Source: Octopus sinensis (lineage: Eukaryota). Taken from it: a stretch of 64,000 nt of DNA. The stretch covers positions 19,778,001 through 19,842,000 of the forward strand of contig NC_043000.1 of NCBI RefSeq assembly GCF_006345805.1. Reading direction: 5' to 3'. Under the pieces are notes generated by a model. That model made no database searches. It worked only from the letters and a program-made list of their open reading frames with translations, and had not been told where the DNA came from. The position numbers and the translations under genes were made by a program. Of this stretch, positions 6,824 through 59,813 are shown in pieces (the stretch's first letter is position 1; each line of letters opens with the position of its first letter).

Positions 6824-6826
6824 ATG
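6824..6826 (+). CDS. CALM: Calmodulin proximal leader exon end (ATG only)
   Basis: gacATG|gtaagg, purine at -3; nearest ATG-donor to exon 2; an ATG-only first coding exon is canonical for calmodulin genes. Confidence 0.85.
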
Positions 6827-8216
6827 GTAAGGAAAACCACTTGTTTCATTCTTTGATTTTTTTTTTTTTGTTGCTATTCCTAAACAATAGCAAATGACAT
6901 TTTCTTAGAATATTTCTCCTCGTTTTTGACAAATTTTTCTTTATATATTTCCCCTCTTGTCATCGTTCTTTTTTCAACTCATTTTTTTTCTTCCTTAGGC
7001 TGATCAACTTACAGAAGAACAGATTGCTGGTAAGTTTTTGTTATTTTTTTCTCCCTCGTTTATTTAATTTTTTTTTTTTTTGTCTCCTCTGCATGCTTCG
7101 GTCACTCTCTTCAATTTCTTGCTCCTTCCTTGTCCTTAGTTTTGCTTCACTAGTTTGTTTTCATATCAACATGTACATTTCACCACCAAATTGTTGGATT
7201 CTACTTACATGTGAGGCTTGATGGATTTACCCTTCTATGGACCTGTACCAACTGTTCTGATAATGGATTATTTCAAATATCTCACTGGATGGATACCTTT
7301 AATGCTGCATGGATATTACCAACATTTCTGGTCTCTGCACTTCATCATACATAATCTACAAATGTAGTCGTTCAAATAATGCCACTAATTACTCTTTACC
7401 AATGGCTTCTTGGCTTCTAATTCACCATTTCACTTTTCTTCATCCGTTTTTGTTGGGGTTATTTATATTTATCTGAAGCTTCTAGATTTGCAGTCAAGTA
7501 TAATGAAGATCATTATTTTCACTCTCCAGAATTCAAAGAAGCTTTCAGTTTGTTTGACAAAGATGGAGATGGGACCATCACAACGAAAGAGTTGGGAACA
7601 GTAATGAGGTCACTTGGTCAAAATCCCACAGAAGCTGAATTACAAGATATGATAAATGAAGTAGATGCTGATGGTAAGCACCTTGTCTTTCCTATGTACA
7701 ATCTGTTTGATAAGGAATTCCTGTACATGACGTATCGATAAATCAGTCAGTATTAAATTTTGTCAATCTACCCAATATGTTGTTGGTATGAAGAATCAGC
7801 AGTGAGGTTTCAATATTAATTTCAGGAAATGGAACCATTGATTTTCCTGAATTTTTGACCATGATGGCCCGAAAAATGAAAGACACAGATAGTGAAGAAG
7901 AAATCAGAGAAGCATTCCGTGTCTTTGACAAAGATGGAAATGGTTTCATCAGTGCAGCAGAATTGCGTCATGTAATGACAAATTTAGGAGAAAAGTTGAC
8001 GGACGAAGAAGTTGATGAAATGATCAGGGAGGCAGATATTGATGGTGATGGCCAGGTTAATTATGAAGGTGAGTTCGTTGGAATTGCTAATTTGATTTAC
8101 ATTGCATTAATGGAGATATTTACATCCACCTTTAAAAAAAAAAAACTTTCGTCAAAATGTTAATTCACTGTTTTCTTTTTGTTTCAGAGTTCGTTACAAT
8201 GATGACTTCCAAGTAG
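6824..8216 (+). CDS. CALM: Calmodulin, complete spliced CDS join(6824..6826,6999..7029,7530..7673,7826..8068,8188..8216), 149 aa
   Basis: Exons of 3+31+144+243+29 = 450 nt, all GT-AG. Translation [34 protein letters not shown]...[18 protein letters not shown], with four EF-hands and invertebrate-type residues (F99, T143, S147). Confidence 0.98.
6999..7029 (+). CDS. CALM: Calmodulin exon 2 ([10 protein letters not shown])
   Basis: ttccttag|GCTGAT...GCTG|gtaagt; 31 nt; too short for the ORF track. Confidence 0.98.
7530..7673 (+). CDS. CALM: Calmodulin exon 3
   Basis: ctccag|AATTC...GATG|gtaagc; 144 nt. Confidence 0.98.
7826..8068 (+). CDS. CALM: Calmodulin exon 4 (equals vertebrate exons 4+5, 107+136 nt)
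   Basis: tttcag|GAAAT...GAAG|gtgagt; 243 nt. Confidence 0.98.
8188..8216 (+). CDS. CALM: Calmodulin last coding exon (EFVTMMTSK*)
   Basis: gtttcag|AGTTC...AAGTAG; stop at 8214-8216. Confidence 0.98.
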
Positions 8217-11200
8217 AACTGGTGAATTATTATTATAATTATTATATTATTATTATTATTACAAGCAAATTAAAGTTTATTCACACTGCAGTTTCATCCT
8301 GGCATCTCTCATTTCTGTATGTGTACAGCTCAAGGTCCTGTATTTAGTCGCACATTCAATTAAAAGATGTACCTGGGATGGTCTGTACAGTTATCTCTTC
8401 CCGGTAGTGGTGCTGTAAGATCACCAATTATGTCCCTATCCCATCTGACTACTTTCTCTGACCTAGTTCTGTAGACTCCACTATATCAAATTCATTTTTC
8501 CTTTCCTTCAAAGATGTAAAAAAAATTTCTGCCTTCCAGCCAAGCCAATCTCTTTGCTATCTTTTTCCATGCTGGTCCATCAGATCTCATTCAAATAAAG
8601 ATAACTGTAAATTAAGTGGTATTGTATTTTTTTTTTTTTTTTACCTTTTCTTTATTTTTTATCTTCTTCAAAGACAAGGAACAAACAAAATAGGTATATA
8701 TATATATATAAAACACAACATAAATTAGTTGCATAGTTGTTACAATGGAGTTTTAGTTTTCACATCATGGTCCTGATGTAGATTCTGCATTGACACTAAG
8801 TTAACAATTGATGCAGACTTTTTAGATTTAAGTAAGTTTCTATTTATTTGATAGGCAGGGGTGGGTGGGTAGGTATGCGTTATTTTATCTGTTGTTTCTA
8901 ATTAGTTACATTAGTAATAGGAATATTAGAAAAGTCCAAAGCTTCTTTTATAAATCTAAACAACTTACAGGCTGTTGACCGTTTTAATGTACTGATGGAC
9001 ACATGGGTGTTTCACACTTGTTTTAGAACTTTTGGAAATTGAAAACATGATGTACAGCATTAAAACACTAGATGGGCATGGCTGACTAGATTTCCCCTAA
9101 ACTACTTTGAATGTTTTTTCTCTTTTATGATGCGAGCAGCATCATTTTGTTACCATTTCCCAACTTGTGGGGATTACCATTTTTGGCAATTTTTTTATTT
9201 TTTTACTTGGTGAAAACTGGATATTTAGTTTTTCTCCTTGTTGTTGTCGTCATAAGTCAGCTTTTCATCTTATTCACTTGCAAATTTCTTTAAGTCAGTT
9301 TTAGTCTATTAACCTCGTCCTAGCACATTCTGCTTTTCATTTCGACTTACATTCTCTTTTCGAGACCACTACAGGTGAGAAGAGCTGCAATATCAAGGAT
9401 ATGCTACTTGGCCTTGCTTCTAACCGAGCAAGAAGTGGAGAAAAAGGAAAAGTCACATTACAAACATTCATCATTGTCATTTGAAGGAAACCAAACTGTA
9501 TCCAAAATAACTGATTACTTTTTCTTATAAAATTTTAGATTAAAATGACCAATACTGTCTAACCAGTTGTATGGTTGTTTGAGTTATCCATTAATTTCCT
9601 TTCCCCCCTCTTCCTCAGTACTTCTGTGCTCTTTGTCTTTTCTTCTAGCCCCCCCTTTCATCTTTTTTCTTTTTTTAATTTTTTTTCTTTTTTTCAATAT
9701 TTCCTGAGGTGGCAGCTATTTCTTAATGGTTGCTGCCTGATGGTTATTTGGGGAAATGTTGAAAGTTATTAATTTCCTGGCTGACAATTTGATTGTGGAA
9801 ATTAATACTGGAATCACTGACAAATAAGTCAAAGAATTTTTTTGGTGTAATTTTACGATGTTGTTTCCATGTGGGAAGTTTTCTGACAATATTGTATTTG
9901 TTGTCACTGCTCGCTATGAGAAATTTATATTGATATTGAATAATAAAAAACCAACAAAACAAAATTAAGTTCACATTTTGTATATGATTGGCAAAAAAAT
10001 AACAATGTCATGTGAAATAAATCTGACAAGATGTCAAGCATTGTCACTACTCCTTCTGTACAGATGCTTCTTGCTTCGGTCCACTTTGTTCTGTGGTGTG
10101 TTGTTTCACATCTGTTCTGTATAGCTTCAATTCTTAAAATCCTCACCTGCCACATTATACTTTCTTGAACAGCCTTTTTTTTAATTATAAGACTTCTTTT
10201 TTTTATTTTTATTTTTTAAATTCTCATCAAAACTTTTTTTTTCATAATCATTCTTAATTTTATTTTGTTTATTTTTTAATACATCCTAAATTTGATTGTG
10301 TGCAGGTGTGTAATATGGCAGGTTGTTGATTTTATGTTGCATGTGTTTGGTTTTACAAGTGCCATCTTATGACTTCCTGTTACAACTTTGTCACTAGAAA
10401 ATAAAAATCTTGTTGCTACTGCTGCTACTTACATTTTAGCACAAAATCTACATTATGTTGTATAGCGGGCAGTCTGAAACAAAAATATCATTAACTTATT
10501 CTAATTCATTTACATTGTAGACTTTTCTTTCTCTCTAGATGTATTTTAGAAACTAGAAAACCAGTTGTAGAACATTTTCCCCTTCTAATCAGACCGCAAT
10601 ATTAAGCTCTTCTCTGAACAGAATTATACTTGTAATATTAAACAGCAACATTTGAATAGAATATAACTGTTAATATGATTTGATGCCCTACAACAGTTTA
10701 ATAGTGAAGTGTTGCTTCCTTTTTCTTTTCTTCCTCTTTAACAAAACAAGGATGAAGTTAGCAGTTCCTTCCTGACTTATGAATTTTTGCTTTTTAATTT
10801 GAAAGTTTAATTAGTTACCACTATTTTTCTCTTTCTCCTTGTACCTCTTTGTTGGAGGTTGAGGATATTAGTTGTTACTGCCATTACTATTTCATTAAAC
10901 ACTCTAATATCTCCAGTGCTACCATCTGTTGAAACATTTCCACTGTCATCTATGCGTGTCTGAATTATATCATTTCTCAATGTGTTCTTATTGCTGTGTG
11001 TGAGCAGGAAATCTTGATGTGATCAGCACTTGTTGACTGACCCCTCCCCCTCCTCTCCACATTGCCTGTCCACGCACTTGACACTGCTGAAGGCTCCTGT
11101 TTCTACCAGTCTACAGCTTAACAATCATCTATTGCAAAGACTTGACTCATAATTGTTTACAAGTCAATCTGCTAGCATGAACTGTTTCATGTTGAAACAC

Positions 11201-59220: not shown

Positions 59221-59392
59221 TGAATTGCTGTTAAAATGTACAAAAAAATAACACCCTCTGTTGTCGTCGTGCACAGCAAAAACACACATATCCAAGCAGG
59301 CGGCCATTCTTATGATGCATGTTGTGTGGAACTATTCATCTTCGCTGCTATGGTTTTACACCTGCTGGATGGTGATAGATACCAGTGAATAC

Positions 59393-59680
59393 TTTATTGT
59401 TAACTTCACTTGACATACTAAACAAGTAGCACATTAACTGCATTCCCTGTAGCTGTCTACCTACCCAGCCATCCACTTTATTGGCATCTGAACAGGCTGG
59501 TTAGCTGGGGTAGATTGTCTGTCTGTTTGTTTGTGTGGTGGCTGGTTTGGTGTCTAGATCGTGATTTACTTCTGTGGTAAGCAGCAGTAGGGTGGAGAGG
59601 AGACACAGGCAGCAGGAAACTAGCTGATCCTTCTGAACAAGCATGACATTTCATTTCGACATTTCTCGGTAACATACCAG
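59393..59680 (-). other. Putative TTC7 3' UTR and poly(A) signals
   Basis: Minus-strand AATAAA at 59477-59482 and 59393-59398 downstream of the stop; TG/T-rich sequence further downstream. Confidence 0.5.
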
Positions 59681-59813
59681 TCAGTGCAACAGGCGTGGAA
59701 TGACAGTGAATGGAATGATAGGACTGTTAGCTTCTAAGTCCATAGCAAATTGGAGACAGTCACTTGCAGCCTCATACTGACCGAGGCTGTGTAACACTTG
59801 ACCAAGACAGTAC
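59681..59813 (-). CDS. TTC7: Tetratricopeptide repeat protein 7 (TTC7A/B-like), last coding exon; upstream exons lie beyond the window
   Basis: Strong acceptor ttttttcctttctttttttcttatacctag|G, then (W)YCLGQVLHSLGQYEAASDCLQFAMDLEANSPIIPFTVIPRLLH*. This matches the recalled TTC7 C-terminal TPR and tail (W.LG.VL..G...AA.EC..ALELEA.SP..PF.IIPR.L). Confidence 0.9.

What the first reader, a model, noticed from the sequence alone, without database searches (positions are those of the whole stretch)
6824..59813. Calmodulin and TTC7 lie tail-to-tail: possible bilaterian-deep microsynteny retained in a cephalopod
Seen: calmodulin on + and an unannotated TTC7 terminal exon on -, convergent, with no other confident gene between them. 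Recalled knowledge: human CALM1 adjoins TTC7B (14q32) and CALM2 lies next to TTC7A (2p21), both convergent; coleoid genomes are heavily rearranged; plant TTC7-like NPG1 proteins bind calmodulin. Inference: the pair may predate the protostome-deuterostome split and be held together by shared cis-regulation or a functional Ca2+/PI4KA link.
Basis: partly seen in the sequence, partly recalled or inferred. Interest (0 to 1): 0.8.

Follow-up and report, generated by a model that had tools for sequence, protein, structure and literature searches.

The report
Ancient calmodulin–TTC7 neighbours in octopus
In this octopus DNA the calmodulin gene and the last exon of the TTC7 gene lie tail-to-tail, and the same two genes are also neighbours in an annelid, an acorn worm, bumblebees and mammals, so this is a very old inherited gene neighbourhood of a kind already known by the hundreds.

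Summary
A compact five-exon calmodulin gene lies on the + strand (ATG 6824, stop 8216). The 43-codon terminal exon of TTC7 lies on the - strand (59813 to 59681). The two stop codons are 51,464 bp apart, and I detected no gene in the repeat-rich DNA between them.

The exon is not unannotated. It is identical to the C-terminus of the public Octopus vulgaris "TTC7B-like" protein.

The claim of deep ancestry is supported by direct look-ups:
- Capitella (annelid) and Saccoglossus (hemichordate) both have TTC7, then an STPG-like gene on the opposite strand, then calmodulin on the opposite strand, all within 10 kb. Papers give the same gene order for cattle (TTC7A, STPG4, CALM2).
- Three Bombus species have calmodulin directly after TTC7, but in the same direction.
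- Lottia (intronless TTC7), Asterias and Pecten show no calmodulin within 10 kb.

So the ancestral block had a middle gene, which is missing from the octopus interval.

Why the pair persists was not tested. My best guess is cis-regulatory entanglement (about 0.5). Neutral survival is about 0.3 and a protein-level Ca2+/PI4KA link about 0.1.

It fits the criteria of the roughly 600 published conserved ancestral microsyntenic pairs, so I file it as a new member of a known kind, of modest interest.

The parts
6824..8216 (+). Calmodulin gene, coding part. Exons 6824-6826, 6999-7029, 7530-7673, 7826-8068 and 8188-8216, with stop TAG at 8214-8216.
   Evidence: tblastn and direct reading. Splicing gives 450 nt and 149 aa, with all introns GT-AG. 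PDB calmodulin match E 6e-93 over residues 1-149.
59681..59813 (-). Terminal coding exon of TTC7. The first base completes a split codon, inferred to be the Trp (W) that precedes YCLGQ in P0295. Then come 43 codons (59812-59684) and stop TGA at 59683-59681.
   Evidence: The exon is preceded by the acceptor TTTCTTTTTTTCTTATACCTAG. It aligns to the last 40 residues of human TTC7B, E 9e-12. It is 43/43 identical to the C-terminus of Octopus vulgaris TTC7B-like P0295. It aligns to the extreme C-terminus of crayfish, Lingula and vertebrate TTC7.
8217..59680 (.). 51.5-kb interval between the two stop codons. It holds the 3' UTRs plus repeat-rich DNA, and no gene was detected in it.
   Evidence: 34% of the interval is repeated elsewhere in the window. 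It contains many microsatellite arrays. No tRNA gene was found, and the only Rfam hit is one tRNA-like match. Pfam found no family for the 10 longest ORFs tested (9 of them in the interval) or for 147 non-repeat stop-free segments of at least 55 aa. No STPG-like exon was found. In the O. vulgaris assembly no gene is called within 10 kb downstream of TTC7.
59814..64000 (-). 3' part of the last TTC7 intron. The penultimate exon lies beyond the window.
   Evidence: No further TTC7 match by tblastn or in the open frames of this stretch. The O. vulgaris gene spans 184 kb.

Best explanation
The calmodulin-TTC7 pair in this octopus window is what remains of an ancestral bilaterian gene block. That block ran TTC7 forward, then an STPG4-like sperm-tail PG-repeat gene in reverse, then calmodulin in reverse. 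In several lineages RPS27A and MTIF2 sit upstream of TTC7.

Octopus inherited the block. It no longer has a detectable middle gene in the interval, which now spans 51 kb and is rich in interspersed and simple repeats.

Shown here: the identity of both genes, their geometry, and the presence of the same neighbourhood in an annelid, a hemichordate and bumblebees. Mammals and fish rest on gene lists in papers.

Inferred: the block has survived because regulatory DNA of one gene lies in the shared 3' space or in the long 3' introns of the other. The most plausible case is that enhancers of the small, very highly expressed calmodulin gene sit near or inside the 184-kb TTC7 gene. Breakpoints between the genes would then be selected against. 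This is the logic of a conserved ancestral microsyntenic pair with a bystander gene.

My confidence in the ancestry part alone is about 0.9. The figure of 0.5 below is for ancestry plus regulatory constraint together.
For: Ancestry:
- Capitella L002 has TTC7(+), a 264-aa SHIPPO-repeat gene(-), and a 149-aa gene(-) whose large exon is 100% identical to calmodulin. The calmodulin gene's 3' end is 9.1 kb from the end of TTC7.
- Saccoglossus L005 has TTC7(+), a 275-aa SHIPPO gene(-), and a 149-aa gene(-) ending EFVTMMTSK*.
- Owenia L004 has TTC7(+) and a 311-aa SHIPPO gene(-), after which the locus ends.
- The three middle genes are collinear orthologues. The Saccoglossus one passes Pfam SHIPPO-rpt at 31.5 bits against a cut-off of 20.
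- Three Bombus species have calmodulin 6.7 kb after TTC7.
- The cattle gene order is TTC7A, STPG4, CALM2 (PMC11654436). Human TTC7B has CALM1 nearby (PMC5264598). Zebrafish socs5b synteny includes MCFD2, TTC7A and CALM2 (PMC3296744).

Constraint (indirect):
- The pair survives in lineages with heavy rearrangement. Coleoids are one such lineage (PMC9023564).
- It survives where the interval is large: 51 kb here.
- It survives in both vertebrate paralogue pairs.
- It survives in Bombus even though the orientation changed.
- Octopus TTC7 is a 184-kb gene. That matches the long-intron profile of bystander genes described in PMC3514665.
Against: No regulatory, expression or chromatin data were available, so the constraint is inference only.

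Calmodulin was not found next to TTC7 in three lineages:
- Lottia, where TTC7 is an intronless copy among unrelated genes.
- Asterias, where two Solute_trans_a genes follow TTC7.
- Pecten, where a Neur_chan gene follows TTC7 within 10 kb. Anything beyond 10 kb was not seen.

Convergent pairs are not the class enriched among co-regulated conserved pairs; head-to-head pairs are (PMC3514665). Calmodulin is not a developmental regulator, so the classical regulatory-block model fits poorly. From memory only, human CALM3 has no TTC7 neighbour.
Confidence: 0.5

Rival explanations
1. The block is ancestral but has survived neutrally. No function depends on the adjacency, and it has simply not yet been broken in these lineages.
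For: The ancestral interval was short, 10 kb or less in Capitella, Saccoglossus and Bombus, so it was a small target for breakpoints. Calmodulin was not found next to TTC7 in Lottia, Asterias and probably Pecten. The middle gene has dropped out in octopus and Bombus. Orientation flipped in Bombus. These changes show that the block tolerates alteration. Hundreds of such pairs exist (PMC3514665).
Against: The pair is retained in several independently and heavily rearranged lineages: coleoid, hymenopteran and vertebrate. In vertebrates it is retained twice after genome duplication. It also persists across large intervals such as the 51 kb here. All this is more than I would expect for an average neighbour pair, but I could not quantify it with these tools.
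Confidence: 0.3
2. The pair is held together because the two proteins work together. A Ca2+/calmodulin input into the PI4KA-TTC7 complex would make co-expression from one chromatin neighbourhood advantageous.
For: Plant TTC7-like NPG1 binds calmodulin in the presence of Ca2+ (PMC8774046). Calmodulin-activated calcineurin docks on the PI4KA-TTC7B-FAM126A complex and modulates PI4P synthesis (PMC8523714).
Against: No paper I found reports direct calmodulin binding by an animal TTC7. Calmodulin has a very large number of partners (from memory), and I know of none reported as a conserved neighbour. The genes are convergent and share no promoter. Lottia's TTC7 appears to be a relocated intronless copy.
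Confidence: 0.1
3. Coincidence. The two genes became neighbours independently in octopus, and the resemblance to human loci is chance.
For: Only one TTC7 exon is in the window. Coleoid genomes created many new neighbourhoods (PMC9023564).
Against: The same two genes are neighbours in Capitella, Saccoglossus, Bombus and mammals. As a rough estimate of my own, two specific genes being neighbours by chance in a genome of about 20,000 genes is of the order of 1 in 5,000 per lineage.
Confidence: 0.03

Closest known systems
Conserved ancestral microsyntenic pairs (CAMPs) of Irimia et al. 2012 (PMC3514665)
   Same: [quoted passage not shown] One partner is a long-intron gene. The proposed causes are co-regulation or a bystander arrangement.
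   Different: I could not check whether TTC7-CALM is among the 595 published pairs, because the supplement is not held. The pair is convergent, not the head-to-head class that is enriched among CAMPs. Neither gene is a developmental regulator.
Mammalian TTC7A-STPG4-CALM2 and CALM1-TTC7B loci
   Same: The genes are the same. The order TTC7, STPG, calmodulin matches Capitella and Saccoglossus. From memory, the human pairs are tail-to-tail like the octopus pair.
   Different: No STPG-like gene was detected in the octopus interval. I know of none between CALM1 and TTC7B either, but that is from memory.
Metazoan microsyntenies retained in coleoid cephalopods (Schmidbaur et al. 2022, PMC9023564)
   Same: An old bilaterian neighbourhood survives the coleoid genome reorganisation. 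That paper reports 275 such blocks in Euprymna, with larger intergenic distances than the novel cephalopod blocks.
   Different: Those blocks need at least 3 genes, so a two-gene remnant would not be listed. No TTC7 entry appears in the held part of the supplement, which was cut when stored.
Genomic regulatory blocks (target gene plus bystander genes)
   Same: A very long neighbour gene lies next to a small gene, and the adjacency is conserved over large intergenic distances.
   Different: The defining features were not shown. Those are a developmental regulator as target and conserved non-coding elements inside the bystander. Calmodulin is a housekeeping and neuronal signalling gene.

Membership tests
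Calmodulin | A protein of about 149 aa with four EF-hands, near-identical to canonical calmodulin over its full length | tested here: met
   The spliced 149-aa product matches PDB calmodulins over residues 1-149, E 6e-93. The matched exon segments are 100% identical to those of Capitella and Bombus.
TTC7 (PI4KA-complex scaffold) | The C-terminal TPR helix and tail (...LE..SP..PF..IPR..) align to the extreme C-terminus of known TTC7 proteins | tested here: met
   Human TTC7B residues 798-837 of 837, E 9e-12. The peptide also aligns to the C-terminal ends of crayfish, Lingula and vertebrate TTC7.
TTC7 (PI4KA-complex scaffold) | The exon belongs to a gene whose product carries the TTC7_N domain (PF19440) | tested here: met
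   The peptide is identical to the last 43 residues of Octopus vulgaris P0295 (781 aa), which has PF19440 on record. The rest of that gene lies outside the window.
TTC7 (PI4KA-complex scaffold) | The exon is expressed and spliced as the terminal exon | not testable with these tools
   No RNA data were available. Supporting signs are the canonical acceptor and the behaviour of read-through ORFs from other animals (P0015, P0029), which start matching TTC7 at the same residue.
Conserved ancestral microsyntenic pair (Irimia et al. 2012) | The two genes are not paralogues | tested here: met
   One is an EF-hand protein and the other a TPR scaffold.
Conserved ancestral microsyntenic pair (Irimia et al. 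2012) | [quoted passage not shown] | tested here: met
   Cephalopod mollusc (window), annelid, hemichordate, hymenopteran insect, and vertebrates from papers. That makes five lineages, with 0-1 intervening genes wherever the gene order was seen; the human paper lists CALM1 only as nearby.
Conserved ancestral microsyntenic pair (Irimia et al. 2012) | Present in the published list of 595 pairs | not testable with these tools
   The supplement is not held. The main text does not name TTC7 or CALM.
Genomic regulatory block | The target is a developmental regulator, with conserved non-coding elements spread through the bystander gene | not tested
   No alignable genomes of other cephalopods were available. 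By general knowledge calmodulin is not a trans-dev gene, so membership is doubtful.

The most novel reading that the evidence does not exclude
The TTC7-(STPG4)-calmodulin block is a regulatory unit more than 550 million years old. In this reading, enhancers that drive the very high, neuron-biased expression of calmodulin sit in the shared 3' interval and in the 3' introns of TTC7. Alternatively, one chromatin domain couples the dosage of calmodulin and of the PI4KA scaffold. Either way the pair cannot be separated even in genomes as scrambled as those of coleoids.
Probability: 0.3. Interest if true: 0.55.

Novelty: new member of a known kind. Interest (0 to 1): 0.35.

Why it matters
If the pair is constrained, it is a clean and easily assayed case of a convergent, non-developmental gene pair kept together across Bilateria. 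That class is poorly explained by the bidirectional-promoter and regulatory-block models.

It could point to where calmodulin's long-range regulatory DNA lies, including at the human disease genes CALM1 and CALM2 and their neighbours TTC7A and TTC7B.

The variants found here give natural experiments for asking which part of the arrangement matters. They are the missing middle gene in octopus and bees, the flipped orientation in bees, and the relocated TTC7 copy in Lottia.

If the pair is not constrained, it is one more entry in the list of surviving ancestral neighbours and a useful local marker of orthology.

Tried and rejected
1. A word-indexed homology search with the 43-aa peptide found nothing. 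This was a short-query artefact. The exhaustive search and the Lingula-seeded search found the identical Octopus protein.
3. Three look-ups found no record: Lingula P0069, Liolophura P0276 and Patiria P0298. Only the longest isoform of a gene is indexed.
4. The locus around the anonymous ENA peptide P0015 (L009) showed only transposon-like ORFs and no calmodulin within 10 kb. The species is unknown, so it is uninformative.
5. I searched the octopus interval for an STPG4-like gene with a PGPGxY motif scan, tblastx using three orthologous loci, and tblastn using two reconstructed peptides. All were negative.
6. Pfam on the 10 longest ORFs tested and on 147 packed ORF segments gave no family, not even for fragments that look transposon-derived by eye.
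The scan with calmodulin returned 80 loci, none with TTC7 or STPG nearby. No non-bilaterian outgroup was obtained.
8. Literature searches for the pair as a named synteny returned nothing.
9. The Drosophila adjacency could not be checked.
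Full report
**What is in the window.**
The + strand carries a complete, very compact calmodulin gene. Its ATG is at 6824-6826, followed directly by a GT donor. The remaining exons are 6999-7029, 7530-7673, 7826-8068 and 8188-8216. All four introns (172, 500, 152 and 119 bp) are GT-AG, and the spliced product is 149 aa. It matches calmodulins in the PDB over its whole length (2bkh_B, E 6e-93, residues 1-149).

On the - strand a polypyrimidine tract and an AG precede an exon starting at 59813. 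That exon encodes 43 residues (YCLGQVLHSLGQYEAASDCLQFAMDLEANSPIIPFTVIPRLLH) and ends with TGA at 59683-59681. The finding's coordinates (6824 and 59813) are therefore exactly the calmodulin start codon and the first base of that exon. The two stop codons are 51,464 bp apart.

**Is the peptide TTC7?**
Yes, for four reasons.
- Against all PDB sequences the best hit is human TTC7B. The alignment covers TTC7B's last 40 residues (798-837 of 837, E 9e-12). The next hits are designed consensus TPR proteins that cover only the first 30 residues, which form the generic TPR helix.
- An exhaustive HMMER search of 1.84 billion representative proteins aligned the whole peptide to the extreme C-terminus of full-length TTC7 proteins. 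These were crayfish P0062, Lingula P0069 and a vertebrate TTC7B-like protein, P0051.
- The public Octopus vulgaris protein P0295 ('repeat 7B-like', 781 aa) carries the TTC7_N domain and heads a UniRef cluster of seven Octopus sequences. It ends ...KSHQSW|YCLGQ...PRLLH, which is 43/43 identical to the window peptide.
- Read-through ORFs from other animals (P0015, P0029) begin to match TTC7 at this same residue, which suggests a conserved intron position.

The exon is therefore real and is annotated in public data. My own first search, which found nothing, was an artefact of a word index applied to a short query.

Only this last exon is in the window. tblastn with five TTC7 proteins finds no other exon. 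In the O. vulgaris assembly the gene spans 184 kb.

**Is anything between the genes?**
I found no gene, but the test is imperfect.
- 34% of the interval is repeated elsewhere in the window.
- There are many (TA)n, (TATG)n and similar arrays, one of them 740 bp long.
- The only Rfam hit is a tRNA-like match that ARAGORN does not call.
- Pfam found no family for the ten longest ORFs tested (nine of them in the interval), nor for 147 non-repetitive stop-free segments of at least 55 aa.
- Several segments look by eye like decayed transposon genes. Examples are a mariner-type ...APSDYHLF... motif at 34115 and reverse-transcriptase tails at 26515-27231 and near 53.2-53.5 kb. Pfam did not confirm any of them.
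- In O. vulgaris nothing is called within 10 kb downstream of TTC7.

Short exons of a fast-evolving gene or a non-coding RNA gene cannot be excluded.

**Is the neighbourhood old?**
This was the key question, and it could be tested directly. I looked up the genomic places of TTC7 proteins from other phyla with 10-kb flanks. All loci are oriented so that TTC7 is on the + strand.

| Species | Arrangement downstream of TTC7 | Upstream of TTC7 |
|---|---|---|
| Capitella teleta (annelid) | 264-aa SHIPPO-repeat gene(-), then a 149-aa gene(-) whose large exon is 100% identical to calmodulin. The calmodulin gene's 3' end is 9.1 kb from the end of TTC7 | Tex-like gene |
| Saccoglossus kowalevskii (hemichordate) | 275-aa SHIPPO gene(-), then a 149-aa gene(-) whose last exon reads EFVTMMTSK* | MTIF2(+), RPS27A(-) |
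| Owenia fusiformis (annelid) | 311-aa SHIPPO gene(-). The locus ends 1.5 kb later | Arf-family gene |
| Bombus, three species | Calmodulin 6.7 kb downstream, in the same direction as TTC7 and with no middle gene. Residues 2-60 are 100% identical | BBS7-like gene |
| Lottia gigantea (mollusc) | RRM and FKBP genes, no calmodulin. TTC7 is intronless (2,475 bp for 824 aa), which I read as a relocated retrocopy | DUF2039 and hydrolase genes |
| Asterias rubens (echinoderm) | Two Solute_trans_a genes | MTIF2, RPS27A |
| Pecten maximus (mollusc) | An intronless Neur_chan gene 6.3 kb downstream. Nothing further was seen within the 10-kb limit | RPS27A |

The three middle genes in Capitella, Owenia and Saccoglossus are collinear orthologues. 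The Saccoglossus one passes the Pfam threshold for the sperm-tail PG-rich repeat (31.5 bits against a cut-off of 20).

Papers give the matching vertebrate picture.
- Cattle gene order is SOCS5, MCFD2, TTC7A, STPG4, CALM2, EPCAM (PMC11654436).
- Human TTC7B has CALM1 among its neighbours (PMC5264598).
- Zebrafish socs5b is syntenic with MCFD2, TTC7A and CALM2 (PMC3296744).

The convergent orientation of the human pairs is from my memory and was not tested.

The simplest reading is an ancestral bilaterian block. It ran TTC7 forward, STPG4-like in reverse, then calmodulin in reverse. I think RPS27A and MTIF2 probably lay upstream, because they appear there in several sampled lineages. The block is kept intact in an annelid, a hemichordate and mammals. 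In octopus and bees it is reduced to TTC7 plus calmodulin. It was not found in the limpet, the sea star and perhaps the scallop. No STPG-like exon is detectable in the octopus interval. Independent chance origin in octopus is very unlikely.

**Why has it persisted?**
Nothing here tests this, so what follows is inference. I favour a regulatory constraint at about 0.5. Its elements would lie in the shared 3' space or in the long introns of TTC7.

Four observations lead me there:
- The pair survives in heavily rearranged genomes (coleoids: PMC9023564).
- It survives across large intervals.
- It survives in both vertebrate paralogue pairs.
- It survives in bees even though calmodulin has been turned round, which suggests that proximity matters rather than orientation.

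TTC7's size (184 kb in octopus) fits the long-intron 'bystander' profile described for conserved pairs (PMC3514665).

There are arguments against:
- Convergent pairs are not the class enriched for co-regulation.
- Calmodulin is not a developmental regulator.
- Three of the sampled lineages do without the adjacency.

Neutral survival of an originally very short interval is the main rival, at about 0.3. A protein-level reason is possible but weak, at about 0.1. Plant NPG1, a TTC7 relative, binds calmodulin (PMC8774046). Calmodulin-activated calcineurin docks on the PI4KA-TTC7B-FAM126A complex (PMC8523714). Neither finding says anything about gene order.

**Comparison with what is known, and novelty.**
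The pair meets the operational definition of a conserved ancestral microsyntenic pair: unrelated genes, four or fewer intervening genes, and at least four major lineages. About 600 such pairs were catalogued in 2012 (PMC3514665). In addition, 275 old blocks of three or more genes are known to survive in a squid (PMC9023564). I could not see the 2012 list. No paper in the searchable library names this pair as deep synteny. I therefore file it as a new, or at least unremarked, member of a known kind.

A specialist would find the human-annelid-hemichordate three-gene match neat rather than surprising, so I score interest at 0.35.

**Limits.**
- Flanks were capped at 10 kb and look-ups at twelve. 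'Absent' in Pecten, Asterias and Owenia therefore means 'not within 10 kb'.
- No cnidarian, sponge, amphioxus, Nautilus or squid locus could be examined.
- An attempt to reach outgroups through metagenome contigs failed.
- The Drosophila arrangement could not be checked.

Noticed in passing
L002:15841-19081, L004:39129-45143, L005:68772-72521 (absent from window 8217-59680): An orthologous STPG4-like gene (sperm-tail PG-rich repeat) sits between TTC7 and calmodulin in Capitella and Saccoglossus, and directly after TTC7 in Owenia. Papers list STPG4 in the same position in cattle. No trace of it was found in the octopus interval or in the Bombus, Pecten, Lottia or Asterias loci.
   Followed up: yes
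L005:1-9760, L010:1-9692, L003:1117-9152: RPS27A lies head-to-head with TTC7 in Saccoglossus, Asterias and Pecten, and MTIF2 lies just beyond it in the first two. RPS27A and MTIF2 are listed side by side in a cattle chromosome 11 gene list that also contains TTC7A, STPG4 and CALM2 (PMC12075139). The ancestral block may therefore have been five genes long.
   Followed up: partly
L001:10001-12475: Lottia gigantea TTC7 is intronless (2,475 bp for 824 aa) and sits among unrelated genes (DUF2039, hydrolase, RRM, FKBP). It looks like a retrocopy that replaced the original gene.
   Followed up: no
L006-L008, about 22340 to the locus end: In three Bombus species calmodulin is the next gene after TTC7, 6.7 kb away. 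It points the same way as TTC7 instead of towards it.
   Followed up: partly
window 17103-17166 (+): This is a tRNA-like Rfam match (44.5 bits) that ARAGORN does not call as a tRNA. It may be the head of a tRNA-derived SINE. Neighbouring short segments recur 8-16 times across 14-58 kb.
   Followed up: partly
window 23703-24442, 33289-33604, 46738-47055 and others: The window has unusually long (TA)n, (TATG)n and (AT)n arrays, up to 740 bp. They generate the many spurious YIYIYI open reading frames in the ORF list.
   Followed up: no
window 26515-27231 (-), 51757-52245 (-), 34115-34138 (+), 43083-43112 (+), 44401-44430 (-), 53167-53469 (-): These open frames look by eye like decayed transposon genes: reverse-transcriptase tails, a transposase with a helix-turn-helix start, mariner-type C-terminal motifs and an endonuclease fragment. 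Pfam gave no significant hit for any of them.
   Followed up: partly
P0005 (Logan contig, 1,456 bp): This 175-aa 'protein' in the public collection is a straight read-through of the same TTC7 exon and its flanks, 98% identical and so probably from a related octopus. The stop codon TGA is translated as W, and it has one substitution in the exon (LEANSP to LESNSP). It is a gene-caller artefact, not a protein.
   Followed up: partly
window 6824-8216 versus the TTC7 gene: There is a strong size contrast. The calmodulin coding region with all its introns spans 1.4 kb, in a genome where the neighbouring TTC7 gene spans 184 kb.
   Followed up: no
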